From positions 268,731 through 332,730 of the IMG/VR virus record IMGVR_UViG_3300024999_000030: a DNA stretch of 64,000 nt; one strand, written 5' to 3'. Below the pieces are notes generated by a model. The model made no database searches, was not told the DNA's origin, and was given only the letters and a program-made list of their open reading frames with translations. Made by a program: the position numbers and the translations under genes. Below, piece by piece: positions 13,630-64,000 of the stretch (positions are counted from its first letter, which is position 1; the number at the start of each line of letters is the position of its first letter).

Positions 13630-14441
13630 TTGATAAAATTAAGAAAGAAAGATTATCATACTCAAAGATAGATTGTTATAAACAATGTCCTTTTAAATAT
13701 AAAAAGATACACATTGATAAGGATGTACCATTTAAAGAATCTATTGCCGTTAGATATGGACAATTTTTACATGGTATTCTTGAGGACTTAGGTAAGGCAA
13801 TCAAGGACAATGATAATGAGTTTCCAGATAATGTAAATGATATAGTATCTAAGTCTTGGAAAAAATATAAGTCGGCACAGAAGATTTTTGATGGTGCATT
13901 AATTAAAGAGGCTGTAGATATCATACATAACGTTGGTAAAAAATTTAGAGCTACGCCTGATGAAAAAATAGTTGAAGTCGAAAAATCATTCAAAATGGAT
14001 TTGGATGATAAATATTATATCCAGGGTAAAATTGATCAGGTTCTTAAAGTGGGAGATAGGTATTTAATTAGGGATTATAAAACAAATGCAGATACTAAAT
14101 ACTTATTAGCTGATCAATTACAACTTAAAATATATGCTATGGCATATAGTAGATTAAATAATATCCCGGCAGATAAGATTGATTGCAGTTATCTTATGTT
14201 AAGAATTGATTGCCAGGAACCTAAATCTAGTTTTGAACAAAAAGATATCGATGAAACAGAAATTTATTTAAAAACAATTATTAGGGAAATGGAAGTATCT
14301 AGATCCACAGGGACATATAAATGTGTAACTGGGGGTTTATGTCCATGGTGTCCTGTATTTGAAAACTGTCCTACAGCTAGTAAAAATCCTAGGTTCTTAA
14401 CTAAGCGAGCTGAATTAAGGAGCCTTGGTAAGGTAGATTAA
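13626..14441 (+). CDS. PD-(D/E)XK exonuclease (RecB/AddB/Cas4-like, probable Fe-S staple)
   Basis: SYSKIDCYKQCPFKY, HGILE, VEVEKSF, GKIDQV, RDYKT, QLKIYA, and C-terminal CPWC...C. Confidence 0.88.
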   Translation: MIDKIKKERLSYSKIDCYKQCPFKYKKIHIDKDVPFKESIAVRYGQFLHGILEDLGKAIKDNDNEFPDNVNDIVSKSWKKYKSAQKIFDGALIKEAVDIIHNVGKKFRATPDEKIVEVEKSFKMDLDDKYYIQGKIDQVLKVGDRYLIRDYKTNADTKYLLADQLQLKIYAMAYSRLNNIPADKIDCSYLMLRIDCQEPKSSFEQKDIDETEIYLKTIIREMEVSRSTGTYKCVTGGLCPWCPVFENCPTASKNPRFLTKRAELRSLGKVD

Positions 14442-17371
14442 TGAGACTCTACAAGTATTCCGATGATAACAAAAATGTTAATGAAGAAACTAAAGATGGT
14501 CTAGAAGAATCAAAACCTCAATCTTCATCAACAATCCCAGAGATAGAGCCTGGGGAAAATGATGAAATGATTGGGATACTTGTAGAGAGTTTTGCCGATA
14601 CTCTTATATCTTCTTTATGGTCAGATGATTTTCCAATTCCACTATCGGAATTGACGCATCACATAGGACAATTAGGAGAAAATAATTTTATAAGGTCCAT
14701 GGAAAATATTAGGACCTTTTTAAGTAAAATTGGGGCTTTTAAATATGAGGTGCCAATCAACAACAAGGAAGATGCCCTCCAATATATACAATCGTTTTCC
14801 CCTCAGATTAAAGATTTAGGTAAGTCACATGCGATGGCACTGTTACAATTACTTGGTATTAGCGGAAGTAGACCAGAGGAAATCTCATTAGAAACCCCTA
14901 TTGGTAGCCCATCAGCTAAAGGCGAAGAAGGTCGTCCAACTCTAGGTGGGACACTTACAGATAAAAATACACCTCTTAGTGAGTTATTAGATAAAGAAAC
15001 CTATGTAGATAATTTATCTAGGATAAAAGATGTTTATGAAGAAATAGAAAATTTAGATCAGTTGTCACCAGAGGAAGCAGATACAAAACGCGGTCAATTA
15101 CTTACACAATTAAAATCAATTGAAAAATCTTTTTCAGCTTTTGATGTGCCAGAACAAGTAGAAAAAAAAGTAGAACAGCTGTCTATTAAATTACAATCGT
15201 CAAACGCTTTTCAAAGTAGAGTAGAAGAACTTAAGGATAAATATGGTTTAGTGGATATGAAAGATCCTAAAATTTTAGCGTATGCTGCTCAGTTAGATAG
15301 GATGCCACCGATTAAACCAGGTGAGTTTAAAGAGGGGTTTCCAGTTGTTGACTTGTCTACTATTCCAGATATAGCTAAGACTGGCGCCAGCGACATAGCA
15401 AAGTTTTTATTGATAGCTAGATTATCAGAGTCTAAAGTCTTCTTAACGAGAAATCAAAATTCTGGTAGTCCGGTTGGTGGAGGAATGGCCACAAAGTGGC
15501 CCACTACTATATCTGGAACAGATACATTTATGGACCATAGATTTTCATCTAAGAAAGCATTCGTGAATTATTCTGGAAATATTAGCTCATTAAGTTCAGA
15601 AGAGTTTAGTAAAATATTAGATAAATATTTAGGGGGGGCAGAGAAAGCCGGTTCGGGTAGACAAACTTCTTATACATGGCCCATGGTGTTTAGTCAGGCC
15701 TTAGGGTCCTTTATAGGTATGCCCGAAGAAGCTATGTTAAACCTTGGTGCAGAATTAGCAGACGCAATAGAGACTGAAGATAAATCTCAAATTAAAGCTG
15801 TGTTATCAAAATATAAATATAATTCATATGGAGTATTAACAGATACTTCTCATGACTCTTTATCTAAAAATAATTATACTTTTAGTTCTATTTGTACTCC
15901 AACTCAAATGGTAAAGTCTTTAGCGGAAGCTAAGGGAACTAATGCTGAAACAATCCATGAAGAAATGAAAGGTCTTTTACCGAATAGTAAAACGCTTCAG
16001 GGGGCTATAGGACAACCAGTATTTGATAATAGAATGCCAATCATTCCAATGCCCCCAGAGGCACTAGTGGCCATTGCTTTCTATGTTGTGAGGTTATTTA
16101 TAGCCACATGTAGAGCTAATGTAATATCAACAATAGAAGAATATAATTCTAATGAAAAAGTTCAATCAGATATAGAATCTGTTATTAATAATTTAATGGA
16201 TAATTTAAATTCATCTTTAGATTCATCTGGCGATTTTCGTTTATCTGGTGTGACTAAAGCATTTACGAGACCTATTATACAAACCACTAAGCTTCAAAAT
16301 TTTGGGGTATCGGTGGATAAACTTAAATCATTAGCAATGGAAGGTATTAAATTATCATTGCAAAGTGGAGCATTATTATCTTCATCGGAAGCCTCATTCG
16401 ATTTTAAAAAACAGTCGTCATTTAATAGAGAGGCAATTTATAATATTGCCACTACTTTATCTAAAGCCACATTAGATAGTATCCAAGTTGGGGATAAAAC
16501 CATCCCGACCAATATGACTAGTGTAACTTCTGGAACTCGTCTTACGGATTTTAGTTCCAGAAGATTATTAGATGTAGAAAAAGCCGAACAGCATGGTAGA
16601 TATTCATTATCTCAGCCCGAGCAAATTAAAGCAAGCACATCTGAAACTGTTCGTAGATCTATGGGTAGAATGTCAAGTCTTGTTGATAATTGTAATCTAG
16701 TATCTATCATTGGAGTGGAACAAAGCGAAGATGCCACTGTATTTGCCATTCGGTCTAACTCTAGTCCCGTAATACAAAATGGCGGTAAGGGAGCAAAGAT
16801 TACTATCTATACAAATACGGATGGAAAAAGAGAAGAGGTATTATCTTCCACAACTGATAGAATTTCAGTTAAACCATCAATTGGGGACGATAGTGGTAGG
16901 CTGGCATACAAGTTGTTTATATCACCAGCAGTTGATTTTTCTATGGAAGACTTTGATTATGAGCTTAGTATAGGTCAAGAAATTATGTATCAAGCTAGAT
17001 TAGCCACTGAGAAAAACACTCTTGATGTTTGGATTAGAGAAGTTAACAAAGAATTATTTAAGTTTAATGAAATGAAGTCTGAAATGATTCAAGCTATTTC
17101 TTCTAATAATTTATCAAGGGCTATGGAAGTTATGAGAATTAATGAGCTATCTTTAAGGGTGGACCTAAATAGATTTAAAACACTTAATTCAGATTACAAA
17201 TCTATTGTAGATTCTGTAATGAATAAAATTAAAGATAAAGAAGACGTAGATGCATATTCTATTTTTATAAAAGATTATGTATTTAAATGTATAGTGGCTA
17301 TTAATCAAATCAGAACTCAAATTGTTGATTTTAAAAAACAAGCAGCTATTATTCTTGGGGTGGGTAAATGA
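14441..17371 (+). CDS. Large hypothetical protein (976 aa), candidate virion/internal protein
   Basis: Long ORF coupled at both ends (TAATG, ATGA), with an acidic N-terminus after MRLYKYS. No domain recognised. Confidence 0.8.
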   Translation: MRLYKYSDDNKNVNEETKDGLEESKPQSSSTIPEIEPGENDEMIGILVESFADTLISSLWSDDFPIPLSELTHHIGQLGENNFIRSMENIRTFLSKIGAFKYEVPINNKEDALQYIQSFSPQIKDLGKSHAMALLQLLGISGSRPEEISLETPIGSPSAKGEEGRPTLGGTLTDKNTPLSELLDKETYVDNLSRIKDVYEEIENLDQLSPEEADTKRGQLLTQLKSIEKSFSAFDVPEQVEKKVEQLSIKLQSSNAFQSRVEELKDKYGLVDMKDPKILAYAAQLDRMPPIKPGEFKEGFPVVDLSTIPDIAKTGASDIAKFLLIARLSESKVFLTRNQNSGSPVGGGMATKWPTTISGTDTFMDHRFSSKKAFVNYSGNISSLSSEEFSKILDKYLGGAEKAGSGRQTSYTWPMVFSQALGSFIGMPEEAMLNLGAELADAIETEDKSQIKAVLSKYKYNSYGVLTDTSHDSLSKNNYTFSSICTPTQMVKSLAEAKGTNAETIHEEMKGLLPNSKTLQGAIGQPVFDNRMPIIPMPPEALVAIAFYVVRLFIATCRANVISTIEEYNSNEKVQSDIESVINNLMDNLNSSLDSSGDFRLSGVTKAFTRPIIQTTKLQNFGVSVDKLKSLAMEGIKLSLQSGALLSSSEASFDFKKQSSFNREAIYNIATTLSKATLDSIQVGDKTIPTNMTSVTSGTRLTDFSSRRLLDVEKAEQHGRYSLSQPEQIKASTSETVRRSMGRMSSLVDNCNLVSIIGVEQSEDATVFAIRSNSSPVIQNGGKGAKITIYTNTDGKREEVLSSTTDRISVKPSIGDDSGRLAYKLFISPAVDFSMEDFDYELSIGQEIMYQARLATEKNTLDVWIREVNKELFKFNEMKSEMIQAISSNNLSRAMEVMRINELSLRVDLNRFKTLNSDYKSIVDSVMNKIKDKEDVDAYSIFIKDYVFKCIVAINQIRTQIVDFKKQAAIILGVGK

Positions 17372-18060
17372 AAGAGTTTGCATATGTAGTTTCCAGACTC
17401 AAAACAGCCGCTCAACAAACCGGTGAAACTTGCTATATAGTTGGTGGAGCCGTGAGAGATATAATATCTCTTAAGAAGATTAAGGATGTTGATACGGTGG
17501 TGGCAATAAATCCTGAAAAATTTGCCTCAGCATTAGCCTCTACAACGGAGGGAGCAACCGCAGAAGAGGTTCATGCTCCATTTCCATTGTGGTCAGTGGA
17601 TATTAGCGACGTGTCTGTAGATGTAGTTGGGTTAAGAGGAAAGAGTCTTCAAGAAGATATTCAACATAGAAATTTTACTATCAATACAATATACTATGAC
17701 GTAGTAAGAGATAGGTTTGAAGATCCAACTGGAAAAGGGTTTACTGATCTTTATAATGGAGTAATTAATACTGTTACTCCAGATTCTTTTGTTTTTTTTA
17801 GTTCTAGTCCACATGAAATTAATAGCATATTTATAGCAATAAGATTAGTAGCGGATTCCGGATTTAAATTAAGTGAACAATTAAAAAGCGGAATTAGGAA
17901 AGCCTTAGAGCATGGCCTCATTCCCGCTGAGTTATCTAAGAGATCTAAAAAGGAAATACTAAGAACTAGGCTTTCACATAATTTTAAGACCAAAGCTCTC
18001 CCCATAATTGAAGAGCTTGGTTTGGAGCATTTTTATGAAGCTGCCGCTGTTTCTCCATAA
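17368..18060 (+). CDS. Short class II tRNA nucleotidyltransferase/poly(A) polymerase-family head domain (divergent)
   Basis: YIVGGAVRD...DVD, EDIQHRNFTIN (canonical RRDFTIN), DPTGKGFTDL. Lacks the flexible loop and a clear EDxxR. Confidence 0.8.
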   Translation: MKEFAYVVSRLKTAAQQTGETCYIVGGAVRDIISLKKIKDVDTVVAINPEKFASALASTTEGATAEEVHAPFPLWSVDISDVSVDVVGLRGKSLQEDIQHRNFTINTIYYDVVRDRFEDPTGKGFTDLYNGVINTVTPDSFVFFSSSPHEINSIFIAIRLVADSGFKLSEQLKSGIRKALEHGLIPAELSKRSKKEILRTRLSHNFKTKALPIIEELGLEHFYEAAAVSP

Positions 18061-21000
18061 AACCGCCCAGGCGGGATTAAATCAAGCTGTATTTAATATG
18101 GTAGCAGCCGCCACTGATGCAGGATTTAATGCACCAATCTATTTAGCTGGTGGTGCCGCTAGAGATATCATTCTTGGAAAGTCTCCTAATGACCTAGATG
18201 TTATGATAGAAAAAGAAAATGGAGCTGAAGAATTTGGAAAAATTTATTTAAACTATTGTGAAAAAAATAACATTAAAGTTTCTACTCCAGGTAAAGCTGT
18301 GGGTGCTAATTTTGGTGTATATAAATTTAGGCACGATGGTTTAGAATTAGATTTTGCTACTTCGCGTACCGATACTTATACTGAAGATTCTAGGAAGCCT
18401 ACAGTTGAATCTGCAAGCCTTAATGAAGATGCGGAGAGAAGAGACTTCAGTATTAATGCTATGTATGTTTGTATATACGGCACTCCCTCTGTTCAACCAG
18501 ATGACAAGGTTGATATTGGAGGAAGAGAGTTTGGAGTTTATGACCCAACTCATAAAGGAATTAAAGATTTAAAAAATGGAGTTATTAGTTTTGTAAATGA
18601 TGATCATGATTTTACTTTAAGCGAGGACCCCATTAGGGCTCTTAGGGCAGTAAAATTTTCTGGTAGAAAGTTTGGAGAAAAAACTTTTACAATTGAACCA
18701 GAGACATCTAAAAGTATTAAAGATTTTTTAAATTCAGAAAAAGGTAAAGAGCTATATCTTAAAAAGGTTAAACCGGAGAGGCCCTGGAAAGAATTAAAAG
18801 ATATTCTAACTGCTCAGAATTTAAAAGAAGCTATGAAACAGTTTAAGGAAACTGGAGTCAGGGACTTTATTTTTGATTTACCAAAAGAAGAATTTAATAG
18901 TTGGGACATGGATCAACTTAACAAACATCATAATCTTAATTTATATGATCACACAATCTTTGCTATGGAAAATCTTGGAGAAGGACTTCATACTATGGGG
19001 GAAAATGGCCTTCCCATTTCCAAAGACACTGAAGCCACTATACAACTAGCAATGTTATTACATGATGTGGGAAAAAGACATAAAGAATTTAAACCTAGAG
19101 AAGATGGAACAGTTAAATATTTAAAGCATGAAAATAAATCTACAGATGTTTTAAAAAAATATGTTTGGCCGAAGCTGGCACAGTTACCACCAAAAACTCA
19201 AGAGATTGTTAATTACTTTGTGAAGAGTCATATGGATTTTCATAAGTATCCCAAGAAGGATGAGGGAGATATTAGATTTTTAAAGCAGATGATTTATAAT
19301 CTATTGCCTAAAACTTTTGGTGGTTCTCTTGGAGCAGATAAAGAAAAACAGATGGAGATAATGTCTTATGTTGTGAGTTTCTTTGGTAGCGCAGATTCTT
19401 CTGCAAAACAATTAGAGGATGAAGAAAAAAATAAACTAACAAAAGACTACGAAGACTTTGGTAATAGACTTAGATTGTCTAAACCAAGGAACCTTTTGTT
19501 TAATGTTGCTGCTCCAATCATCAAAGAAATATTGACTAATCATGGAGTTCAAATTTATAATAGTGCAATCGGATCTATATATGAATACTTAAATGTTTAT
19601 ATTATTAACGTTTCAGAAGAACCAAAAGATATAATTCAATTTGTATCTAAGCAGACAGAACAAATTCTAACCAATGTAAAAAATTTTGTTAAAGAATTTA
19701 TAAATGAGCATGAAGGAACAAATGAACAAGAGGCGCTTGATAAATATCTTGCCAATGCTCATAAGTTTTCTGGATCAATTAAACATAGGTTTAAAAAAGA
19801 TGCAATCTTTGAAGTGTTGTCGGATTTATATAAAGATAAAAAAATAAATGGAGATGTAAAAATGCCTAAGCTCGTTATTGCTAAATATAAATCTAAAAAG
19901 AAACTCGATACCGGTACAGTTGTATATGAGTATGGAGAAGCCGATAAAAAGAAACGAGCTAAAAAAAAGGCACGTCAAGTGAGAAAGGTGTTTCAAAATA
20001 TTAATAAAATTAAAAAATCTTTTGAAAAAGATCTAAAGTCCGATGATAAAAAAATACAAATGACGGCTTTAGCTGTGGGAATTATTTATCATATTTATGA
20101 GCGGGTAGGCGATAGAGCTAATGTAGGAACAGGCGTTACTTCATTTAGAAAGAAACATATTACAGTAAAAGGAAATAAAGTACAGTTTAAATATGTGGGA
20201 AAATCACATATGAAACAAGATAAAACATTAACAGATTCAACTATAGCCAAAATCATTAAGGAGAATTTAGAAGGTAAAAGTAGTAATGCATATCTGTTTG
20301 ACTATACAGATGAAAATGGTAAAAAATTTGATGTATATTCCAGTGACATTAATGAATATCTTAAATCTTTTAACATTACCGCTAAAGATTTAAGGGCCCA
20401 CGCAGCTAATGATATTTTAATTGCTAAACTTAAATCAGCTGGAAAAGCTAAAGGTGAATCTCCAGAAGAAAAAGAAAAATGGCGTAAAGAAAAACTCAAA
20501 GAATTAATTGAAGAAACAGCTGATGAAATTGGTCATACTCCCGGCATTTGCAAATCATCATATATAGACCCATCTCTTATGGATGAATATATAGCCAGTG
20601 GTAAAATTATTAAATTAGCTGCTGATTTTGATTTGACAGTAATAATTAAACTTGCGGATATTTCTGTTAATCCAAAGATTAAAGAGTTAATGGATAGAGA
20701 ATTCACACCAGAAGAACAATCAATCATTTCAAATCCACATGATGTAAGATCTACAATTAATGATGAAGTGTTCTTACAGGCCTTAAGTAAAGCTAAACAA
20801 CAAGGAACTTTATCTGGTTTATTAGAAATAGTAGAAGATAATGACCCTTCTGCTTTTGGAGTTACCCCGGTTATAGTTGGTGGTAAAGCTATTCCCATTA
20901 TTGGGCTCAATGTTAATAAAATTAAAGAAGAGGCAGCCCAGAAAGGTAAATCGATTGAAGAGGTGTTGTCAGAACAGGTTAAACAATTTTTAGGAGTCAT

Positions 21001-21565
21001 GGCCCATGAGAAAGAACATGTCGAAGGCAAAGGTGAACCTGAAGCTGAAAGAGTACAAAAAGATGAAGTGTCTAAACAAACTTCTCAAGAAGGGTCATCA
21101 TCTAAGCTAACAATGGGCTCTCTTAAGTTGGCATCTACAGATAAATCTCTTTTTCAAAAACTTGGTATTAGAGATATTAGTAATGATACCTTATTAAAAG
21201 TATCCAATAATGTTTTAAAAATTCTTGGAATCCCAAATACCAATCTTAATATAGGACTATTGTCTCTTGGGTATCTTGTTATGCTTGGTAATCACCCCTA
21301 TAGGTCAGAATGGAATATTAGACAAGCTACGGGTTTATCTGAACCAATTAATATTAAGGAAGCACAGACCCTATATAATATTTTAGATAACGCAATAGAT
21401 GAGAAACCTATTGAAGAAGATAAGGCAAAAGAATATTATTCTTTTTCCGATGAAGATAAAATGAATCTAGGTGAACTACAATCACTTAAGTGGGAATCTG
21501 AACCATCCTATGCGGCTGGAACAGGTATGGGATTTTATCCTCAAACACATCCTTTTAATTACTAA
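18035..21565 (+). CDS. Multidomain protein: CCA-adding tRNA nucleotidyltransferase + HD domain + type IB topoisomerase + HExxH segment
   Basis: LAGGAARD...DLD, DFATSRTDTY...SRKP, EDAERRDFSINA, EDPIRALRAVKF; HD domain DHT...LLHDVGK...HE; Topo IB motifs ERVG, VGKS, AKDLR, GHTPGICKSSYIDP; AHEKEH. A GGAG RBS favours the start at 18035. Confidence 0.9.
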   Translation: MKLPLFLHKTAQAGLNQAVFNMVAAATDAGFNAPIYLAGGAARDIILGKSPNDLDVMIEKENGAEEFGKIYLNYCEKNNIKVSTPGKAVGANFGVYKFRHDGLELDFATSRTDTYTEDSRKPTVESASLNEDAERRDFSINAMYVCIYGTPSVQPDDKVDIGGREFGVYDPTHKGIKDLKNGVISFVNDDHDFTLSEDPIRALRAVKFSGRKFGEKTFTIEPETSKSIKDFLNSEKGKELYLKKVKPERPWKELKDILTAQNLKEAMKQFKETGVRDFIFDLPKEEFNSWDMDQLNKHHNLNLYDHTIFAMENLGEGLHTMGENGLPISKDTEATIQLAMLLHDVGKRHKEFKPREDGTVKYLKHENKSTDVLKKYVWPKLAQLPPKTQEIVNYFVKSHMDFHKYPKKDEGDIRFLKQMIYNLLPKTFGGSLGADKEKQMEIMSYVVSFFGSADSSAKQLEDEEKNKLTKDYEDFGNRLRLSKPRNLLFNVAAPIIKEILTNHGVQIYNSAIGSIYEYLNVYIINVSEEPKDIIQFVSKQTEQILTNVKNFVKEFINEHEGTNEQEALDKYLANAHKFSGSIKHRFKKDAIFEVLSDLYKDKKINGDVKMPKLVIAKYKSKKKLDTGTVVYEYGEADKKKRAKKKARQVRKVFQNINKIKKSFEKDLKSDDKKIQMTALAVGIIYHIYERVGDRANVGTGVTSFRKKHITVKGNKVQFKYVGKSHMKQDKTLTDSTIAKIIKENLEGKSSNAYLFDYTDENGKKFDVYSSDINEYLKSFNITAKDLRAHAANDILIAKLKSAGKAKGESPEEKEKWRKEKLKELIEETADEIGHTPGICKSSYIDPSLMDEYIASGKIIKLAADFDLTVIIKLADISVNPKIKELMDREFTPEEQSIISNPHDVRSTINDEVFLQALSKAKQQGTLSGLLEIVEDNDPSAFGVTPVIVGGKAIPIIGLNVNKIKEEAAQKGKSIEEVLSEQVKQFLGVMAHEKEHVEGKGEPEAERVQKDEVSKQTSQEGSSSKLTMGSLKLASTDKSLFQKLGIRDISNDTLLKVSNNVLKILGIPNTNLNIGLLSLGYLVMLGNHPYRSEWNIRQATGLSEPINIKEAQTLYNILDNAIDEKPIEEDKAKEYYSFSDEDKMNLGELQSLKWESEPSYAAGTGMGFYPQTHPFNY

Positions 21566-21571
21566 TTATAT

Positions 21572-21612
21572 AAGTCAACACCATGTATGCTATTTATGGT
21601 GTTGACTTTTTC
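21572..21612 (+). terminator. 13-bp perfect inverted repeat plus U-tract, overlapping the next promoter's -35
   Basis: AAGTCAACACCAT (21572-21584) / ATGGTGTTGACTT (21596-21608), 11-nt loop, running into TTTTT, just after the 21565 stop. Confidence 0.65.
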
Positions 21613-21630
21613 TATTATAATAATTATATT
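21602..21630 (+). promoter_or_regulatory. Sigma-70-type promoter TTGACT-N17-TATATT
   Basis: TTGACT 21602-21607, TATATT 21625-21630. Confidence 0.85.
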
Positions 21631-21651
21631 TATCTTAGACGGGAGGAAAGA

Positions 21652-22002
21652 ATGAATAAACTTATTTGTAGGGGTGGTAAAACCTCTAATGTGGCTTTAG
21701 TAGCTGATGATATTCCTTATGGAAACTTAATTGATTTTAAGTGGACTATTTCCGTAGCTGATCAATATTCTAATTTTTTTGCTCAAGCAGAAAATAATCA
21801 AGATAGTGCTCCATACGTATGGATTGAAGGTCCCAATTGTGAATTAGAATATGAAAGTACCCATGGCCTATGGAAGGTTGTTAGTAATGGAACACCAGCG
21901 GGTACAGCAGTATATTTCAATGGGTCTAAATTAGATAACATGTTAATTCAAGTTTTAATTGTAGCGTACGGATTGTCAGCTGAGGTATCTCCTGGGTCTT
22001 AA
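21652..22002 (+). CDS. Hypothetical protein (beta-rich)
   Basis: GGGAGG RBS and the promoter position give a start at 21652 (MNKLICRGG...), not 21583. Confidence 0.75.
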   Translation: MNKLICRGGKTSNVALVADDIPYGNLIDFKWTISVADQYSNFFAQAENNQDSAPYVWIEGPNCELEYESTHGLWKVVSNGTPAGTAVYFNGSKLDNMLIQVLIVAYGLSAEVSPGS

Positions 22003-22031
22003 TGAATTCATTTTAATAATAGAGGATAGTC

Positions 22032-22316: not shown

Positions 22317-22364
22317 TAATCTAGGAAGATTAATAAAACAAAATATTGATACAGGAGAGTAATT

Positions 22365-57831: not shown

Positions 57832-60648
57832 ATGGACGATGCTAAATTTTACCAGGGTGACGTTAAAGGTTTCAACCCATTGGACGAGCTTTCTCCCGCT
57901 CGTCGTGACCAATTAAAAGGGGGGCCCAGTAAAAAGTCTACCGCCGGAGTTAAAACTGGTGATATTACTTTAAATATGCCCGCCGCCGCAGTTGATTCAA
58001 CCAAGTCTTTATCTGCTTATAAAACTGCTTCAGAAAACGGTGGAGGCGGATCTGTTAGAACAATTCCGAGAGTTTATTCACCTCTATTTGAACTTTCTAA
58101 TTTACAGCTTCCGAGGGATAGGCGTACTTTAAATGCGTGGTGTCGACATTTTTATTCCACTCATCCTCTAGTTAGAAACTGTGTTAATCTTCATGCAACG
58201 TTTCCAATTTCTAAATTTGAAATCACTTGTGATGAAAAAACTATTGAAACTGAAATGAATGAATTAGCTGAAGACATGAGACTAATTCATGTGTTGTATG
58301 GTGTGGCACTGGTTTATTGGATGTTGGGGGAAGCTTTTCCTTATGGAGATTGGAACGATAATGATAAGACTTGGCGCCGATGGGTTGTTCATAATCCTGA
58401 TTATGTAGATGTTAAATATTCTGCCGTTACGATGGAACCACTTATTGCATTGCAACCAGACGATACCCTTAAGCGATTAGTTAAAAGTAATGACCCTAAG
58501 GATAAATATATTAGAGCTACATTACCAAAAGAAATAGTATATTATATTTCTAGAGGTATGAATATTCCTTTGGATTCTTTTAATGTTACGCATGTTAAGT
58601 TTTTATCTGAACCATATGATCATCGTGGTACAAGTATTATTGCCTCTTGCTTTAAGGATTTAATGTTATATGATTTACTTAGAGAAAGTGAATATGCTCA
58701 AGCAGCCAATCTTATTAATCCATTAACTCACGTGAAGTTGGGTGATCCATTAGGTCGTTGGCGCCCTTCCGATGAAGACTTGGCTCAATTTAGAGACATT
58801 TTTGTTGATTTGCAATTTGACCTTGATCCTAAATTAATTACACATGGCGCTGTTCAAATTGAAAAGGTCGGCAATGCGGGCGGAATAATTGACACCACCC
58901 CCAAGCTTGATCGTATTATTAAAAATATTATGGCAGGTTTAATGGTTCCAGAGGGAGTTATTACTGGTGAAGGTCCAAATTATTGTTACGATGAAGAAAC
59001 AGAAACTTTAACTAAATCTGGATTTAAAAAATATAATGAAATTACTGACATAGATGAGATTGCTACGTTTAACCCCACCACCAAACTTATTGAATACCAA
59101 CATTATAATGAGAAGATTGTTAATCAATATGATGGGAACATGGTTCATTTTAAAACTAAATTCATGGATATAAAGGTTACCCCCAATCATAAAATGTATG
59201 TTAGGGATCGTAAATCTTTGGAGTGGGGAACCGTAGAAGCCTCAGATGTTAAGCTTAGAAGTAATATTCTAGATCATGGAGACTGGGTTGGCAATACCCC
59301 GTCTGTAATTGAATATGGTGGTTTTACTTTTACACCTAAAGAATTTATTAATTTAATTTTCTACACGTGGACCAGAAGTAGGGTAATCGAAGAAGCTGGT
59401 GAGAAAGTAATGATTTATAAATATGCTCAACGCGGTCCAGCAGTGGAATGGAAAGATGCCCTCGTGGTGCTTGGCGTTAAGTATGATGCAAAGTATAAGG
59501 GTTATGTAATGCGGGACCAAAACTTTATAAACCTATGTCAGAAAGAAATTAATAGTGAATTTGATCATTGGAAATTACCAAGATTAATTGGCGAATGGAG
59601 TAAACACGACATTTATGAAGTCCTCAATAGATTAGCGGGAAAACATGGCATTGCTAAAAAGAGTTATGTTAGTAGACGTGGTTTATTATTACGTGCTTCT
59701 TTTGCTTTATATTCTAAAGAATTGTTGGATTTTATTCAAGAACTATTCTTTAAGTGTGGATATTCTACTAGAATCGAAGCTGAATTTAAACCATGGAGAA
59801 ATAAAACTATTTATAGAATGAATTTTTCTCATGTTGCTAAACAGACGGCAAGAATTATTGACACTAGATCTAAGGGCAAGACTCGTAAAGATTGCAAAGC
59901 TGAAGTGCCCTACAATGGTATTGTATATTGTTTTGATGTTCCCCCTAATCATCTTTTTATCACTAGAAGAAATGGATTGGTTACTATACAAGGGAATAGC
60001 ACGGCTTCTGTGGGATTAGAAGTCTTACGTCAGAGATATTTAATGTTCCGAGACGAATTAGAACATTGGATTCGTAATAAGGTTATGAAACCAATTGCAG
60101 TGGCTAGAGATTGGACTGTGACCGAATCTAAACAGAAAAAATTAATTATTCCAAGAATTCAATGGAATAAACTTACGCTTAAAGATTTAAATGATTATAT
60201 GCAAAAGGTGGCAGAGGGACATAATACCGCTAAGGTTGTCTCACGCGATTCGTATTTAAAAAGCTTAGATTTAGACCCCGATGAAGAGCTTGAGAATAGA
60301 AGAAAAGAAATGATTGAAGATGCTATTCTTACAAAAGAAAAAAACATTCTTTATTCTCCCGCTTATACTTTATCTGAACTTCGTACGCTTAACACCGATT
60401 CTCTAATTGAAGATAGAGTTGTGCCTGGAGCTAATCAACCACCTTCTGGCCCTGGAGCAGGTGGCCAAGGTTCCCCAGATTTCTCTGGTGGTTTAGGTGG
60501 GTCTATGCCAGATTTAGGTGGTGGGCTTGGCGCCCCACCTGAAGGCGAAGCCCCACCTGGCGGCCCACCAGATATTGGTGGTCCTCCTGAAACGGGATCA
60601 CCAGCATCTCCTGGTGGCCCCCCGCCCCCCGCAGGGCCTCCTCAATAA
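57832..60648 (+). CDS. Portal protein containing an intein
   Basis: Follows terL. FYSTHPLVRNCVNLHATFP, RGTSIIASCFKDL, THVKLG, IMAGLMVP and IPRIQWNKL are portal-like, with a Gly/Pro-rich C-terminal tail. Confidence 0.85.
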   Translation: MDDAKFYQGDVKGFNPLDELSPARRDQLKGGPSKKSTAGVKTGDITLNMPAAAVDSTKSLSAYKTASENGGGGSVRTIPRVYSPLFELSNLQLPRDRRTLNAWCRHFYSTHPLVRNCVNLHATFPISKFEITCDEKTIETEMNELAEDMRLIHVLYGVALVYWMLGEAFPYGDWNDNDKTWRRWVVHNPDYVDVKYSAVTMEPLIALQPDDTLKRLVKSNDPKDKYIRATLPKEIVYYISRGMNIPLDSFNVTHVKFLSEPYDHRGTSIIASCFKDLMLYDLLRESEYAQAANLINPLTHVKLGDPLGRWRPSDEDLAQFRDIFVDLQFDLDPKLITHGAVQIEKVGNAGGIIDTTPKLDRIIKNIMAGLMVPEGVITGEGPNYCYDEETETLTKSGFKKYNEITDIDEIATFNPTTKLIEYQHYNEKIVNQYDGNMVHFKTKFMDIKVTPNHKMYVRDRKSLEWGTVEASDVKLRSNILDHGDWVGNTPSVIEYGGFTFTPKEFINLIFYTWTRSRVIEEAGEKVMIYKYAQRGPAVEWKDALVVLGVKYDAKYKGYVMRDQNFINLCQKEINSEFDHWKLPRLIGEWSKHDIYEVLNRLAGKHGIAKKSYVSRRGLLLRASFALYSKELLDFIQELFFKCGYSTRIEAEFKPWRNKTIYRMNFSHVAKQTARIIDTRSKGKTRKDCKAEVPYNGIVYCFDVPPNHLFITRRNGLVTIQGNSTASVGLEVLRQRYLMFRDELEHWIRNKVMKPIAVARDWTVTESKQKKLIIPRIQWNKLTLKDLNDYMQKVAEGHNTAKVVSRDSYLKSLDLDPDEELENRRKEMIEDAILTKEKNILYSPAYTLSELRTLNTDSLIEDRVVPGANQPPSGPGAGGQGSPDFSGGLGGSMPDLGGGLGAPPEGEAPPGGPPDIGGPPETGSPASPGGPPPPAGPPQ
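58984..59997 (+). mobile_element. Intein (338 aa) in the portal gene, with degenerate LAGLIDADG-type insert
   Basis: Block A CYDEETETLT, block B VTPNHKMY, block F/G VYCFDVPPNHLFITRRNGLVTIQGN, followed by Ser(+1). Confidence 0.9.
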
Positions 60649-60703: not shown

Positions 60704-61555
60704 ATGAAATTAGCTTCTAACACGAGTCGTACATATAGCCTTGAGGAAATTAAATCCTTAAAGGTTTTATCTTCTAAACTTAGTGACCATGCACGTATTA
60801 TTGCTTCATTTGTTTCTGGTATTAAAAATAGCGATGTTACTAGATTAATTGCTAGCGATGAATTGATGAAAAAATTAACTGAGCTGGATGGAGAAGTAGA
60901 TAAAGCTAAAGATATGAAAGAATTAAATGCTTTATTGAGCGGTTCCATCGACTTGAGGGTATCTAATCAACTTGATGTTCCACAAAAAGAGGTAGAATCG
61001 GTATCAGCTAAAGCTAAAGAACAGGCAGCAGGAACACTTTTACAGCCTACTGGAAGTATTAGGGAGAATAAATCTATGAAAAATATTATTAAAGAAGCAT
61101 TAAACGATGCCCCTCCAATGCCGGTTCCAGATTCTCCAGCGGCAGCTGCTCCTCCACCATCCCAAGAAGACAACACCCTTGTTGCTATTTTAAATACTGT
61201 TAACCTTGGTCAATTTGTAGATGCTATGCAAGGTCAAAAAAATACAAATGTTCTTGCTGTTATGCAAGATTTGAAACAAGAATTAGATAATGCAGCTAAG
61301 ACGGCTGGATCTGAAGCTTTATTTGCATATGATTTAAGAGGTAAAGCTGCCGCAGCTCAACAGTCTGCCGAAGACTCTATGCAGTCGGTTGCTGATATGA
61401 AAAAACAAATTAACGTTGTTTTACAAGCACTTAAGAGTTTTATGGATTTTGCTAAAACTAATTCTCCAAGTCAACCTTTACAGTCTCTTCAGACCAACGT
61501 TGAGGCACTTATCTCTGGTATTAATGATGGCATGAAAGATGCCGATGTGAAGTGA
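60704..61555 (+). CDS. Hypothetical helical protein, putative internal head/scaffold-associated protein
   Basis: Starts MKLA|S; also contains IKEA and AKTA, Ala/Pro linker, coiled coils. Confidence 0.78.
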   Translation: MKLASNTSRTYSLEEIKSLKVLSSKLSDHARIIASFVSGIKNSDVTRLIASDELMKKLTELDGEVDKAKDMKELNALLSGSIDLRVSNQLDVPQKEVESVSAKAKEQAAGTLLQPTGSIRENKSMKNIIKEALNDAPPMPVPDSPAAAAPPPSQEDNTLVAILNTVNLGQFVDAMQGQKNTNVLAVMQDLKQELDNAAKTAGSEALFAYDLRGKAAAAQQSAEDSMQSVADMKKQINVVLQALKSFMDFAKTNSPSQPLQSLQTNVEALISGINDGMKDADVK

Positions 61556-61564
61556 GGAGGATAT

Positions 61565-61717
61565 ATGTTAGTTAAAACTGCAATTGTTGGCGAGGTAATT
61601 CTTTGTGACAAATGTGGGCATTGTCATGAACTCGAATCCCCTTGTTTGTTTGAAACTCCTGTTGAAAAAATAAAAACAGAGGAAATAATCGATCAGAAAA
61701 AGGGCCAGAACGATTAG
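61565..61717 (+). CDS. Small Cys/His-rich protein (50 aa, not in the ORF track)
   Basis: GAGGAGG RBS. MLVKTAIVGEVILCDKCGHCHELESPCLFETPVEKIKTEEIIDQKKGQND. Confidence 0.75.
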   Translation: MLVKTAIVGEVILCDKCGHCHELESPCLFETPVEKIKTEEIIDQKKGQND

Positions 61718-61774: not shown

Positions 61775-62137
61775 ATGCGAAAAAATTTTAGTTTTAGTGA
61801 GCTACAAGGGGCCCTTCGCACTACCAGCCTCACCAAGACGGCGTCGGCACTTAATCCTGGGGAGATGTCTCCAGAACAAGCGCTTGAAAACATTTGCACC
61901 GTTGGTGATACGCTGGATGCCCATGGCCTAGAGCAGGAAACCGAGAAGCTCACAGCTTCTATTCAGGTTCTTATGTCTCTGATTAAGACTGCTGCTAAAG
62001 AGAACAGTTTTGAGATGACATTTAAATGTCCAGACTGCGGAGCCGAGATTGAAGCTGAAGTTGAGATTGAGGGAGATGGAGAAGGAGAGACCGAAGAACC
62101 CAAGAAGGAAAAAGAGGATGAGGGCTCAGAGGAGTAA
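61775..62137 (+). CDS. Hypothetical acidic protein with CPDC motif
   Basis: AAGGAG RBS. TKTA and IKTA motifs flank the central segment. Confidence 0.78.
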   Translation: MRKNFSFSELQGALRTTSLTKTASALNPGEMSPEQALENICTVGDTLDAHGLEQETEKLTASIQVLMSLIKTAAKENSFEMTFKCPDCGAEIEAEVEIEGDGEGETEEPKKEKEDEGSEE

Positions 62138-62140: not shown

Positions 62141-64000
62141 ATGCTTATTAAAATGGGCGAAGCCGCAGGACCCTCTTCAGCTTTTCAGTTTGTTACTCCA
62201 GATGAGGCTCTTGAATCTCAGATAGTGAGTGAGCGGTTCGCAAAGTTTTTAGAAAAATTTAAATCCGCTGCTGATAATCACTCTATCAAGGGCCCTTCTG
62301 TCGCTCCGTATCGTAGTGATGATTTTCTTTATTTTAAAACAGTAATTATGCACGCAGCAGAACGATCAAATTTAGATAAAGCTGGAGAACTTACTGGAGA
62401 TGGTAAGTTTCTTATTACAAAAGAAAGTGATAAAGAAATTTGGCGTTGGACATCCGATAAGGGAATCTATCCATATGCAAATGCTAATGGAGATATTTTT
62501 CCAGAAGATGAGCTAGTAAAAGCGGCAAGTACTTGGGTTGGCAAGGGATTATATTGTAATCATCAATCTAATGATGTTGAAAAGCTTAGAGGTATTATTG
62601 TTGATACCATTTATGATAAGGCTTCCAAAGAATTGTGGGGCCTGGTTGCATTAGATAAGAAAAATTTTCCCATTCTTGCTGCTCAAGTAAAAAACGGTAC
62701 TATTCGTAATGTATCTATGGGGACAGCGGTAAAGCGTTCCTATTGTACGCTTTGCGGAAACATGGCCGTTGTGGAAGCAGATTATTGTGATTGTATTAAG
62801 CGGGGAATGAAAAATCGTGTAGTTGGTAATACATTGGTTGGGGAAATTAACGTTGGGCTGACTGGTGTGGAATTATCGTTGGTGGGTGTTCCCGCAGATA
62901 AAGATGCAACGATTAGACACGTCTATGCGAGCTTACAAGCCCAACTTGCAGAAATTAACGCAGAACTTAGTACCGAAGCTTCTGATGATGGTATACAGAA
63001 GGTTGCTGAGTTGAAAGAACAGATAGATGCAGTTGAGCGCACAATTAAGCGCGATAAGGAAAAAAAGTCTATAGGAGGCATTACAATGCTTACAGTTGAA
63101 GAGAGGGAAAAGCGTGCGGCAGATCGCCGTAAGATTCTAACTGCTTATATGCAGGGTACGACTGAACCCAAACCCGGCCAGGTAAATTATCCCCCTGAGC
63201 CTATGAATGAGCAGCTTCGTGGTGAGGAGCTTGCTAAATCTAAGAGAGAGGAGTCTGCTACCGCCCCCCAAATGGGTGATAAAGGTGGAGACCAGAAAGT
63301 GCGCACCGAGCAACAGAGGACTGTTGCTGAGAGAAAGACTGATCGTGAACAGCTTCGTCAGGCATACATGCAGGGTACGACTGAACCTACCCCAGGTGGT
63401 CAATATACTCCTGAACCTATGAATGAAAAACTTCGTAATGAGGAGTTGTCTAAAGCCAAGGGCGAAGAGACAAGCACTTGCTCTGCTATTAATCAGACCA
63501 ACTCTATTAAAGAGAAGTTGCAACGCGCCTCTTATCTTGGCGCACGATTTGTGTATGCTAAAGATGAAGAAGGCACTGTAATTCCTGAGCAGTCTTTTTG
63601 GGCTGTACACGCCACTGATGCTCCTCAGGCAGAGTTCACCGAGGAAAATTCAATTCTAACGGTATCCGCTTCTGAAGCCTATGGTAATGACCTCCATAGA
63701 GTAGCTAAAGATGACACTGGTAGTGATGATCCTGAGGGACGTACTAATTGGCAGTTTATGGCTAGTAAAGCTTATGGTAATGAACTCGTAGCTTTTATTA
63801 AGGATGCTGGTATTGACACCGTGTTTGCAACATTTAAAGTAGCTGAAGATCCCGCTCTAGCGGCTGGGTTGGAAGCACCGCCTGAAAGCGAGCCAATTTC
63901 TGGAACGGATCCTTTGGCTGAGCCTGAAGCTCCTATCTCTCCTGAGCTTCCCGGTGAAGAGGGATCTGAGGAAGATAAAGATAAGGTTACAACTAGCGAA
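62141..64000 (+). CDS. Prohead (capsid maturation) protease-scaffold fusion, 3'-partial, missing from the ORF track
   Basis: GAGGAG RBS, frame open for 620 codons to the window end. NANGDIFPEDEL, LYCNH (His141), VSMG (Ser192), CTLC..CDC, ELSLVGVPAD fit the HK97/assemblin-fold protease pattern. Confidence 0.88.
   Translation, partial: MLIKMGEAAGPSSAFQFVTPDEALESQIVSERFAKFLEKFKSAADNHSIKGPSVAPYRSDDFLYFKTVIMHAAERSNLDKAGELTGDGKFLITKESDKEIWRWTSDKGIYPYANANGDIFPEDELVKAASTWVGKGLYCNHQSNDVEKLRGIIVDTIYDKASKELWGLVALDKKNFPILAAQVKNGTIRNVSMGTAVKRSYCTLCGNMAVVEADYCDCIKRGMKNRVVGNTLVGEINVGLTGVELSLVGVPADKDATIRHVYASLQAQLAEINAELSTEASDDGIQKVAELKEQIDAVERTIKRDKEKKSIGGITMLTVEEREKRAADRRKILTAYMQGTTEPKPGQVNYPPEPMNEQLRGEELAKSKREESATAPQMGDKGGDQKVRTEQQRTVAERKTDREQLRQAYMQGTTEPTPGGQYTPEPMNEKLRNEELSKAKGEETSTCSAINQTNSIKEKLQRASYLGARFVYAKDEEGTVIPEQSFWAVHATDAPQAEFTEENSILTVSASEAYGNDLHRVAKDDTGSDDPEGRTNWQFMASKAYGNELVAFIKDAGIDTVFATFKVAEDPALAAGLEAPPESEPISGTDPLAEPEAPISPELPGEEGSEEDKDKVTTSE
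63086..64000 (+). CDS. Nested in-frame scaffold-like gene (internal start at Met316 of the protease ORF)
   Basis: AGGAGG at 63073-63078, 7 nt before an in-frame ATG. The product MLTVEEREKRAADRR... is charged and acidic. Confidence 0.65.
   Translation, partial: MLTVEEREKRAADRRKILTAYMQGTTEPKPGQVNYPPEPMNEQLRGEELAKSKREESATAPQMGDKGGDQKVRTEQQRTVAERKTDREQLRQAYMQGTTEPTPGGQYTPEPMNEKLRNEELSKAKGEETSTCSAINQTNSIKEKLQRASYLGARFVYAKDEEGTVIPEQSFWAVHATDAPQAEFTEENSILTVSASEAYGNDLHRVAKDDTGSDDPEGRTNWQFMASKAYGNELVAFIKDAGIDTVFATFKVAEDPALAAGLEAPPESEPISGTDPLAEPEAPISPELPGEEGSEEDKDKVTTSE
63143..63469 (+). repeat. Two ~36-aa repeats in the scaffold region
   Basis: AYMQGTTEPKPGQVNYPPEPMNEQLRGEELAKSKREE (63143-63253) and AYMQGTTEPTPGGQYTPEPMNEKLRNEELSKAKGEE (63362-63469). 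Confidence 0.9.

What the first reader, a model, noticed from the sequence alone, without database searches (positions are those of the whole stretch)
14441..64000. Recurrent hydrophobic-K-x-A motif: a candidate proteome-wide prohead-protease cleavage code
Seen: the motif sits at protein starts or domain junctions again and again. Examples are SRLKTA|AQ (17368), FLHKTA|QA, IIKLA|AD, IIKLA|DI, SLKLA|ST (18035), FVKTA (32949), IKTA and VKLA (33446), LLKLA|EP (34273), RLASKLA|AA, LEKTA, CKSA|AE, VKSA (35228), IKQA|ALKVA and VKTA|AE (37445), LRKMA|EA (38302), TKTA|AL and TKIA|AN (39958), IKKEA|SG and VKEA|GS (42511), LFKYA|DE (giant protein C-terminus), AYKTA|SE (portal), MKLA|SN (60704), MLVKTA (61565), TKTA|SA and IKTA|AK (61775), FKSA|AD and FKVA|ED (protease). 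It often ends a short leader or precedes an acidic/Pro linker. Established: T4 gp21 and phiKZ gp175 process many head proteins at short motifs (ending in Glu), while herpesvirus assemblin cuts after Ala. Inference: this phage's protease cuts after K-x-A, and the motif works as a tag that predicts which orphan proteins and enzymes are packaged in the head.
Basis: partly seen in the sequence, partly recalled or inferred. Interest (0 to 1): 0.88.

Follow-up and report, generated by a model that had tools for sequence, protein, structure and literature searches.

The report
Predicted Lys-x-Ala head-protease cleavage motif
In this 333-kb groundwater phage and its relatives (including Bacillus phage G), a short Lys-x-Ala motif is strongly over-represented at the starts of head-gene proteins, which most likely marks where the capsid maturation protease cuts; this specificity has not been described in the papers I could search.

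Summary
The listed motifs all exist. That range mixes 18 kb of replication genes and a 3988-aa giant protein with the true late genes.

In the late, non-giant proteins (32937 onward), [LIVFM]-K-x-A occurs 36 times against 15.6 expected. It ranks first of 303 patterns in a blind scan.

- Bacillus phage G head module: K.A is rank 1 of 363 (z 5.4).
- Three metagenomic relatives: z 6.1.
- Mycobacteriophage Spud: R.A and K.A both enriched.

Other evidence:
- The motif concentrates in the first 80 residues (61 vs 13.8, z 12.4).
- Only the K-x-A spacing and order is enriched.
- K and A are conserved in orthologs while x varies.
- It flanks the protease core in 38 of 41 homologs.
- It marks the portal and capsid-protein leader junctions.
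- The same scan on T4 recovers the known I/L-x-E code.

Best reading: an assemblin/gp21-fold protease, fused to a scaffold-like tail, cuts after [K/R]-x-A. No cleavage was observed directly. The claim that the motif tags the CCA/topoisomerase enzymes or the giant protein for packaging is not supported. This is a new variant of a known kind.

The parts
62141..64000 (+). 5' part (619 of 947 codons) of the protease-scaffold fusion gene. The protease core is roughly aa 60-265. Invariant H71 (62351-62353), H141 (62561-62563) and S192 (62714-62716). The rest of the gene lies beyond the window (L001:11438-14281).
   Evidence: PHROG head maturation protease, E 1.4e-13. 43% identical over 152 aa to phage G gp19. 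Invariant His/Ser in 26 homologs. The AlphaFold model's best PDB matches are T4 gp21, EBV protease and HSV-1 protease. Full length taken from the contig.
62258..62269 (+). FKSA (P4-P1), with P1 = Ala43. It sits at the end of the N-terminal leader helix, just before the protease core. Predicted autoprocessing site.
   Evidence: 38 of 41 homologs carry F-x-K-x-A at the equivalent place. Most have a second LKK[IV]A|P[KR]A 7 residues later; phage G gp19 has VKTA|A and VKIA|P. The site is conserved in L005. The model shows helix 27-46 followed by a low-confidence linker.
62996..63007 (+). QKVA (P1 = Ala289), in the helix that follows the protease core. Candidate C-terminal autoprocessing site, separating protease from scaffold.
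   Evidence: Many homologs have L-x-K-L-A|D at about residue 266, right after the core; phage G gp19 has LKIA|S at 276. Conserved in L005.
63797..63844 (+). IKDA|G (63797-63808) and FKVA|E (63833-63844), in the scaffold-like part of the fusion protein ahead of a Pro/acidic linker.
   Evidence: Both K and A are kept in L005 while P2 changes (VKEA|G, FKTA|A).
58018..58029 (+). YKTA (P1 = Ala66) in the portal protein. It lies at the junction between the non-conserved N-terminal leader and the conserved portal core. Predicted propeptide cut.
   Evidence: A [K/R]-x-A sits at the same aligned position in 5 of 6 portals: ours, L005 (two copies), L010, L011 (RLA) and phage G (RKMA|S). This is in an otherwise unalignable region followed by a Gly-rich linker.
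60704..61555 (+). 283-aa orphan between portal and protease, with MKLA|S at its very start (60704-60715) and IKEA|L (61088-61099).
   Evidence: Both sites are conserved in the L005 ortholog, which is only 56% identical overall.
61565..61717 (+). 50-aa ORF beginning MLVKTA|I (VKTA at 61571-61582).
   Evidence: It is a called gene on the source contig. The site is conserved in L005. The L011 counterpart starts MLIKRA|L.
61775..62137 (+). 120-aa orphain just upstream of the protease, with SLTKTA|S (61832-61843) and SLIKTA|A (61982-61993).
   Evidence: The first site is conserved in L005. Both score high with a flank matrix trained only on other genomes.
32937..43830 (+). Block of eleven late orphan genes that carries much of the excess. 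The best-supported sites are:
- VKTA 33072-33083
- LKLA 34327-34338
- EKTA 35315-35326
- IKQA 37727-37738
- LKVA 37742-37753
- VKTA|AEE 37853-37864
- RKIA 41371-41382
- KKEA|SGR 42601-42612
- VKEA|GSP 43006-43017
   Evidence: No Pfam or PHROG matches. K-x-A was observed 37 times against about 27 expected. Conservation against syntenic relatives: L013 (43-80% identical per protein) 21 of 37 vs 16.1 expected; L014 (16-55% identical per protein) 12 of 29 vs 5.4 expected. TATTAATA lies just upstream of 32937 and 42490.
43867..55833 (+). 3988-aa giant protein. It is NOT part of the motif-enriched set.
   Evidence: phi-K-x-A ranks 159 of 247. K.A is 19 vs 28.3 expected (P = 0.03 for depletion). Only 5 of 15 sites are conserved in L005 against 6.3 expected. 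No family match.
14441..32887 (+). The motif is at chance level here.
   Evidence: Annotation. Early proteins: KxA 56 vs 61.1; phi-KxA 21 vs 17.6. No N-terminal excess.

Best explanation
The window comes from a 332.7-kb huge phage whose head module is related to that of Bacillus phage G.

Its capsid maturation protease is a serine protease of the T4 gp21 / herpesvirus assemblin type, with invariant H141 and S192. It is made as a 947-aa fusion with a long scaffold-like tail.

Proposed mechanism (inferred, not shown): the fusion protein co-assembles into the prohead. It then cuts itself and other head proteins on the carboxyl side of Ala in the motif [L/F] or [V/I] - Lys(Arg) - x - Ala, followed by a small or polar residue (P5/P4 hydrophobic, P3 basic, P2 often Thr and never Gly/Pro, P1 Ala, P1' Ser/Ala/Gln).

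Most functional sites lie within the first ~80 residues, so cleavage would remove short N-terminal leaders. The predicted substrates are the protease itself, the portal, the major capsid protein (LVRYA|Q at residue 20) and a set of orphan late proteins.

Shown here: the motif statistics, its positional bias, its conservation and its replication in related genomes. Inferred: that the motif is a scissile site, that the cut is after Ala, and that the tail is a scaffold.
For: 1. Enrichment is confined to late non-giant proteins. phi-KxA is 36 vs 15.6 and ranks 1 of 303; early and giant proteins are flat.

2. It replicates independently:
- Phage G gp4-gp28: K.A 59 vs 32.7, rank 1 of 363. The rest of the first 50 kb gives 31 vs 32.3.
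- Relatives L009/L010/L011: phi-K.A 57 vs 26.2, rank 1.
- Mycobacteriophage Spud: R.A rank 1 and K.A rank 6.

3. N-terminal concentration. phi-x-K-x-A is 61 vs 13.8 in the first 80 residues (z 12.4; next pattern z 3.4), and each genome is significant on its own.

4. Only K-x-A is enriched. KA, K..A and every A...K order are not. Codon usage at the sites is ordinary and the 9-mers are diverse, so the signal is at protein level. No paralogs among the late proteins.

5. Conservation of K and A with variable x:
- 30 of 36 vs 19.6 expected against L005.
- 12 of 29 vs 5.4 expected against L014.
- No excess in the giant protein or in early genes.

6. Sites flank the protease core in 38 of 41 homologs.

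7. In the capsid-protein family, the N-terminal extension carries the conserved I-V-K-Y-A|S-I-L. Ala20 is invariant in 41 aligned sequences. Phage G's capsid protein lacks both the extension and the site.

8. The portal has [K/R]-x-A at the leader/core junction in 5 of 6 genomes.

9. Calibration. The identical scan on T4 head proteins returns I.E (rank 1) and L.E (rank 4), the known gp21 code, and nothing in T4 tail proteins.

10. Protease family: PHROG hit, invariant His/Ser, and best fold matches to T4 gp21 and herpes proteases.
Against: - No proteolytic product or neo-terminus has been seen. Everything is sequence statistics.
- Fold matches are weak (TM 0.23-0.38, E 5e-3).
- About 40% of phi-K-x-A instances are expected by chance, so individual sites cannot be called.
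- Several sites sit in conserved, probably folded regions, where neighbouring residues are more conserved than K/A (35216 family).
- A flank matrix trained on other genomes separates late from early sites only modestly (P = 0.02).
- The second conserved capsid-protein site (LLKEA|L, residue 55) lies in a segment that the solved phage G capsid protein retains. It is therefore probably structural, which shows that conservation alone does not prove cleavage.
- The position of the scissile bond relative to the motif rests on analogy (T4 L-x-E|, herpes V-x-A|S) and on the small-residue preference at P1'.
Confidence: 0.65

Rival explanations
1. K-x-A is a functional short motif of head proteins but not a scissile site. 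It could be a docking or targeting peptide recognised by the scaffold, portal or protease (a capsid-targeting signal), or a recurring helix-capping feature of leader helices. Any cleavage would happen elsewhere, or not at all.
For: - Sites often lie inside predicted or conserved helices (protease leader helix 27-46; 35216 N-terminus).
- The conserved capsid-protein site at residue 55 lies in a region kept in the solved phage G capsid protein.
- No direct evidence of cutting.
Against: - A three-residue motif with fixed P3/P1 spacing is the known signature of gp21-type cleavage codes. So are a small P1' residue, many copies per protein, sites flanking the protease core, and sites at leader/core junctions.
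- The same scan recovers the T4 code.
- Docking motifs are usually longer and present once per protein.
Confidence: 0.18
2. One reading: the motif is a proteome-wide tag across 14441-64000. It would also mark the CCA-adding/topoisomerase enzymes and the giant protein as head-packaged, processed cargo.
For: - N-terminal SRLKTA|A (17368 protein) and FLHKTA|Q (18008 protein) exist. The latter scores well with the cross-genome flank matrix (3.5).
- LFKYA|D near the giant protein's C-terminus is conserved in L005.
Against: - No enrichment in early proteins by any definition, and no N-terminal bias there.
- In the giant protein K.A is below expectation and its sites are not preferentially conserved.
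- With 56 chance K-x-A in the early block, a few good-looking N-terminal ones are expected.
Confidence: 0.08
3. The recurrence is a chance or compositional artefact of Lys- and Ala-rich helical proteins.
For: Late proteins are somewhat richer in Ala.
Against: - Within-protein and within-80-residue shuffles control for composition.
- Other spacings and the reverse order are flat.
- The signal replicates in five genomes of different G+C content.
- Site conservation exceeds background.
Confidence: 0.03

Closest known systems
T4 gp21 prohead protease and its (L/I)-x-E cleavage code (also phiKZ gp175 and SPN3US gp245, S/A/G-x-E)
   Same: - Serine protease encoded between portal and capsid genes. 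T4 gp21 is the best structural match.
- Many head proteins carry a three-residue motif with P3 and P1 determinants, mostly in N-terminal leaders.
- Motif copies flank the protease's own core.
- The blind scan that finds K.A here finds I.E/L.E in T4.
- The phiKZ motif is as cited in PMC13282480.
   Different: - P1 is Ala and P3 is Lys/Arg, instead of P1 Glu.
- An extra hydrophobic preference at P4/P5.
- The protease is fused to a ~680-aa scaffold-like tail.
- Sequence identity to gp21 in the structural alignment is only 16-17%.
Herpesvirus assemblin (HSV-1 VP24/UL26, CMV UL80a), which cuts (V/L/I)-x-A|S (consensus from my own knowledge of the family)
   Same: - P1 Ala and a small P1' residue (Ser is the enriched P1' in phage G).
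- Protease made in frame with a scaffold-like protein and predicted to release itself.
- EBV and HSV-1 proteases are the next-best fold matches.
   Different: - P3 is basic here rather than hydrophobic.
- There are dozens of candidate sites in many proteins rather than two sites (R and M).
- No detectable sequence similarity.
Bacillus phage G head module (gp14 portal, gp19 protease, gp27 capsid protein; PDB 6WKK)
   Same: - Capsid protein 54% identical, protease core 43%, portal 38%.
- Same gene order.
- Same K-x-A excess in head-module proteins.
   Different: - Phage G's protease is a stand-alone 300-aa protein.
- Its capsid protein lacks the ~40-residue N-terminal extension and has no K-x-A.
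- Hydrophobic P4 is less marked.
- I found no published cleavage motif for phage G. The key paper, PMC7316594, was not available.
Cluster C mycobacteriophages (Bxz1/Spud): gp97 protease-scaffold fusion and gp99 capsid protein
   Same: - Protease core 32% identical. It is fused to a long tail (1369 aa; annotated 'tape measure' in the record).
- Basic-x-Ala is the top-ranked pattern in the head module.
   Different: Arg replaces Lys as the commoner P3 residue in this high-G+C phage. The enrichment is weaker (z 3.5 and 2.9).

Membership tests
Assemblin-fold capsid maturation serine proteases (T4 gp21, HK97 gp4, phiKZ gp175, herpes assemblin) | Shared protease fold | tested here: inconclusive
   The AlphaFold model (pLDDT 79.5) has T4 gp21 (5JBL, prob 0.82, E 5e-3), EBV protease and HSV-1 protease as its top five PDB hits. 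TM-scores are only 0.23-0.38.
Assemblin-fold capsid maturation serine proteases (T4 gp21, HK97 gp4, phiKZ gp175, herpes assemblin) | Conserved catalytic Ser and His | tested here: met
   H71, H141, S192 (in V-S-M-G) and E244 are invariant in 26 homologs. The third triad residue was not assigned.
Assemblin-fold capsid maturation serine proteases (T4 gp21, HK97 gp4, phiKZ gp175, herpes assemblin) | Profile similarity to annotated head maturation proteases, and a position between the portal and capsid genes | tested here: met
   phrog_18299 'head maturation protease', E 1.4e-13. Gene order is TerL, portal, two or three small genes, protease..., capsid protein. No Pfam family matched.
Assemblin-fold capsid maturation serine proteases (T4 gp21, HK97 gp4, phiKZ gp175, herpes assemblin) | Proteolytic activity on head proteins | not testable with these tools
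   Needs expression or virion proteomics.
Motif-directed prohead processing (T4 L/I-x-E, phiKZ S/A/G-x-E) | A short motif over-represented specifically in head-module proteins | tested here: met
   K.A or phi-K.A ranks first in the window's late genes, in phage G and in L009-L011. It is absent from early genes. T4 serves as positive control.
Motif-directed prohead processing (T4 L/I-x-E, phiKZ S/A/G-x-E) | Sites concentrated in N-terminal leaders and flanking the protease core | tested here: met
   First 80 residues: 61 vs 13.8. Protease homologs: 38 of 41. Portal and capsid-protein junctions.
Motif-directed prohead processing (T4 L/I-x-E, phiKZ S/A/G-x-E) | Glu at P1 | tested here: not met
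   The enriched pattern has Ala at the last fixed position. No x-x-E pattern stands out. It works like these systems but with a different specificity.
Motif-directed prohead processing (T4 L/I-x-E, phiKZ S/A/G-x-E) | Observed mature N-termini at the motif | not testable with these tools
   No peptide-level data were available. The phage G proteomics supplements and the 2020 phage G paper are not held.
Herpesvirus-type (V/L/I)-x-A|S sites | Ala at P1 with a small P1' residue | tested here: met
   P1 is Ala by definition of the enriched pattern. P1' is enriched for Ser (phage G 12 vs 4.3), Ala (this phage 15 vs 6.2) and Gln.
Herpesvirus-type (V/L/I)-x-A|S sites | Hydrophobic P3 | tested here: not met
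   P3 is Lys (Arg in Spud and in this phage's capsid protein). The hydrophobic preference is at P4/P5.
Phage G-like head module | Homologous capsid protein, protease and portal in the same order | tested here: met
   54%, 43% and 38% identity respectively. Synteny.

The most novel reading that the evidence does not exclude
A basic-x-Ala cleavage code is shared by the maturation proteases of a very large clade of huge phages. The clade includes Bacillus phage G, cluster C mycobacteriophages and more than 1,600 metagenomic capsid-protein relatives. Its P1-Ala preference is closer to herpesvirus assemblin than to the Glu-specific T4/phiKZ enzymes. If so, processed head and ejected proteins could be predicted from sequence alone in uncultured huge phages.
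Probability: 0.55. Interest if true: 0.72.

Novelty: new variant of a known kind. Interest (0 to 1): 0.62.

Why it matters
Proteolytic maturation codes are known for only a few phage groups: T4 (L/I-x-E) and phiKZ/SPN3US (S/A/G-x-E).

A predicted [K/R]-x-A code for the phage G / huge-phage / cluster C mycobacteriophage lineage would do three things:
- Give a sequence-only handle for picking out processed head and possibly injected proteins among the orphan genes of uncultured huge phages.
- Correct annotations. The Spud 'tape measure' gp97 is a protease-scaffold fusion.
- Add a P1-Ala phage enzyme to the comparison with herpesvirus assemblin.

It can be tested directly, because phage G and Bxz1-like phages are cultured and virion LC-MS/MS data for phage G already exist.

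The blind X-x-Y scan, which recovers the T4 code, may also be a generally useful way to infer protease specificity from a head module.

Tried and rejected
- Pfam and PHROG scans of the orphan late proteins and the giant protein gave nothing usable.
- Megablast of 55000-64000 against GenBank phages found no match.
- Literature searches for a K-x-A / Lys-x-Ala prohead cleavage motif, for phage G processing and for Bxz1 capsid processing found nothing relevant.
- The 2020 phage G structure/proteomics paper (PMC7316594) is not held. The supplements of the 2025 phage G multi-omics paper are not held. No peptide-level check was therefore possible.
- The AlphaFold model of the capsid protein with its leader was poor (pLDDT 56.8). 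I used it only to note a predicted helix at 9-25.
- A flank-only scoring matrix trained on other genomes transfers only modestly, so I do not offer per-site calls.
- The EKEA site at capsid-protein residue 50 was considered as the propeptide cut. I dropped it because only 21 of 112 relatives have Ala there.
- A DNA-level motif was rejected.
- Paralogous leaders were rejected: no late-vs-late hits at E < 1e-5.
- Helical periodicity and local composition were rejected.
- Depletion of K.A in the giant protein as 'substrate avoidance' is only marginal (P = 0.03) and is left as a note.


Full report
**Where the window comes from.** The window lies on a 332.7-kb groundwater-metagenome phage contig that has been assembled repeatedly in public data. 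All genes are on the + strand.
- 14441-32887 encodes nucleic-acid enzymes. These are two poly(A)-polymerase/CCA-type nucleotidyltransferase-head proteins (the second fused to a topoisomerase IB core), a trigger-factor-like protein, Pol III alpha in two ORFs, RuvC, a UvsX/RecA-like recombinase, primase and a sigma-like factor.
- 32937-43830 holds eleven orphan genes.
- 43867-55833 is one 3988-aa protein with no family match.

After these come the large terminase (55835), the portal (57832), three small orphans and a gene with a head-maturation-protease domain (62141). On the full contig that last gene is 947 codons long. It is followed by seven genes, the last being the major capsid protein (L001:19406-20386).

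**Check of the observation.**
- K-x-A: 105 observed vs 109.8 expected from within-protein shuffles.
- [LIVFMYTA]-K-x-A: 60 vs 49.1.

Partitioning by function changes the picture:
- With the giant protein included: phi-K-x-A still 43 vs 23.9 (z 3.9).
- Early proteins: 21 vs 17.6.
- The reversed motif is flat.

A blind scan of all phi-X-x-Y patterns puts K.A first of 303 (z 5.1, next 3.0) in late proteins. It ranks 75th in early proteins and 159th in the giant protein.

**Independent replication.**
- The capsid protein is 54% identical to Bacillus phage G gp27 (PDB 6WKK). The protease core is 43% identical to phage G gp19.
- In phage G's head module (gp4-gp28), a blind scan of all X-x-Y patterns ranks K.A first of 363 (59 vs 32.7, z 5.4). 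The other genes in the first 50 kb give 31 vs 32.3.
- Three metagenomic relatives, whose proteases are about 40% identical to this one (L009-L011), give phi-K.A 57 vs 26.2 (z 6.1, rank 1).
- In mycobacteriophage Spud (protease 32% identical, high G+C), R.A ranks first and K.A sixth.

Pooled sites define the motif:
- P5: Leu/Phe
- P4: Val/Ile
- P3: Lys
- P2: often Thr, almost never Gly/Pro
- P1: Ala
- P1': Ser/Ala/Gln

**Controls.**
- Only the K-x-A spacing is enriched (286 vs 199, z 6.5). KA, K..A to K.....A and every A...K arrangement are at or below expectation. This excludes local Lys/Ala richness and helical periodicity.
- Codon usage at the sites is ordinary, and 26 sites use 23 different 9-mers, so the signal is not a DNA motif.
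- The late proteins are not paralogs of each other.
- As calibration, I ran the same scan on T4 gp20, 67, 68, 21, 22, 23 and 24. It returns I.E at rank 1 (29 vs 13.8) and L.E at rank 4, which is the experimentally known gp21 code. T4 tail proteins give nothing, and K.A is only rank 13 in the T4 head set.

**Position.** In the first 80 residues of the five head modules, [LIVFM]-x-K-x-A occurs 61 times vs 13.8 expected when shuffling is confined to those 80 residues. That is z 12.4, rank 1 of 293, with the next pattern at z 3.4. Each genome is significant alone (this phage 10 vs 3.1). The window's early genes are not.

**Conservation.**
- Against L005 (portal 81% identical; other orthologs 47-89%), 30 of 36 K-x-A sites in non-giant late proteins keep both K and A, against 19.6 expected from the background rate. 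P2 often changes (FKVA to FKTA, VKHA to IKRA). In the giant protein, 5 of 15 are kept vs 6.3 expected.
- For the orphan block, syntenic relatives L013 and L014 give 21 of 37 vs 16.1 and 12 of 29 vs 5.4. Early genes give 4 of 7 vs 4.2.
- Conservation is not uniform. In the 35216 family some sites are lost in distant homologs, and one (VKSA|S) lies between invariant cysteines. Only a subset of instances can be functional.

**Landmark substrates.**
- *Protease.* 38 of 41 homologs carry F-x-K-x-A about 40 residues from the N-terminus, just before the core. Most have LKK[IV]A|P[KR]A seven residues later, and many have L-x-K-L-A|D just after the core. Phage G gp19 has VKTA|A, VKIA|P and LKIA|S at these places. 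This phage has FKSA|A at residue 43.
- *Portal.* A [K/R]-x-A lies at the same aligned spot, immediately before the conserved core, in 5 of 6 genomes.
- *Capsid protein.* 112 distinct N-termini from relatives share D-A-L-x-Q-I-V-K-Y-A|S-I-L in the N-terminal extension. This phage has ELVRYA|Q, and Ala20 is invariant in the 41-sequence alignment. Phage G's capsid protein lacks the extension and has no K-x-A.
- A second conserved [K/R]-x-A at residue 55 falls in a segment that the solved phage G capsid protein retains. It is probably structural.

**Protease family.**
- PHROG head maturation protease.
- H71, H141, S192 and E244 are invariant.
- The AlphaFold model (pLDDT 79.5) has T4 gp21 and then EBV and HSV-1 proteases as its best PDB matches, at low TM-scores.
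- No Pfam model matches.
- The C-terminal ~680 residues contain two A-Y-M-Q-G...E-P-x-P-G...P-E-P-M-N-E-x-L-R repeats and acidic/Pro-rich linkers. I infer that they are scaffold-like.
- Spud gp97, annotated 'tape measure', has the same protease-plus-long-tail layout.

**Interpretation.** The best-supported reading is that this lineage's maturation protease cuts after [K/R]-x-A, mostly removing short N-terminal leaders. This parallels T4 (L/I-x-E) and phiKZ (S/A/G-x-E, PMC13282480), but with a P1-Ala specificity reminiscent of herpesvirus assemblin. Placing the scissile bond after Ala is an inference from those analogies and from the small P1' residues. Nothing here shows cleavage.

I found no publication describing this specificity in the searchable library. 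The most relevant phage G paper could not be read, so prior description cannot be fully excluded.

**Verdict.** This is a new variant of a known kind. It is of moderate to high interest, because it can be tested at once in cultured relatives.

Noticed in passing
window 58984-59997 (portal aa 385-722): The portal gene carries a 338-aa insertion that begins with Cys385 and ends Gly-Asn722, followed by Ser723. The flanks join exactly onto uninterrupted portals of relatives (ours 386 to L010 405; ours 723 to L010 406). There are weak Pfam Intein_splicing and PHROG intein-like hits. This is most likely an intein. L005 has it too.
   Followed up: partly
window 23711-24610 and 24567-27122: DNA polymerase III alpha is split into a PHP-domain ORF (299 aa) and a core ORF (851 aa). 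They overlap by 44 nt in different frames. This could be a split gene or a programmed frameshift; not resolved.
   Followed up: no
window 17368-18060 and 18008-21565: Two adjacent poly(A)-polymerase/CCA-type nucleotidyltransferase-head proteins. The second (1185 aa) is fused to a eukaryotic-type topoisomerase IB catalytic core (Pfam Topoisom_I, E 1e-21), which is an unusual fusion.
   Followed up: no
window 22365-23648: A phage-encoded protein with trigger-factor N- and C-terminal domains (Pfam Trigger_N and Trigger_C). A ribosome-associated chaperone homolog is uncommon in phages.
   Followed up: no
window 43867-55833: A 3988-aa ORF directly upstream of the terminase, with no Pfam or PHROG match. 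K-x-A is below expectation (19 vs 28.3), mainly in the first 2000 residues (6 vs 14.7). L005 and L013 have orthologs (63% identical in L005).
   Followed up: partly
window 63092-63270 and 63326-63500 (protease-scaffold aa ~318-376 and ~396-453): Two copies of a module A-Y-M-Q-G-T-T-E-P-x-P-G...P-E-P-M-N-E-x-L-R-x-E-E-L. Relatives carry the same module as K-x-A|Y-F-Q-G... (L009 10933 protein, P0028 C-terminus). It may be a conserved scaffold or capsid-binding element that starts right after a predicted cut.
   Followed up: partly
L001:14352-14762 (N-terminus) and L001:15495-16226 (C-terminus), just beyond the window: A shared peptide phi-K-phi-A|D-x-L-D-x-x-G-Y (VKLADELDKEGY and IKIADALDEAGY) occurs in two different downstream head-module proteins. 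L009 has LIKKTADELDV. Function unknown.
   Followed up: no
window: 13 sites, e.g. 32894, 42468, 60653, 61721: All 13 TATTAATA matches are on the + strand (6.1 expected on both strands). Several lie just upstream of late genes (32937, 42490, 60704, 61775), but others lie upstream of 2108 and 13021.
   Followed up: partly
window 62744-62788 (protease aa 202-216): Three invariant cysteines (C202, C205, C216) lie inside the protease core of all 26 aligned homologs. This suggests a metal-binding or disulfide insert that I do not recall being described for T4 gp21.
   Followed up: no
L012 (Mycobacterium phage Spud) 13860-17969: gp97, annotated 'tape measure' in the GenBank record, has the head-maturation-protease core at its N-terminus and lies two genes upstream of the capsid gene (gp98 between). 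It is more likely a protease-scaffold fusion.
   Followed up: partly
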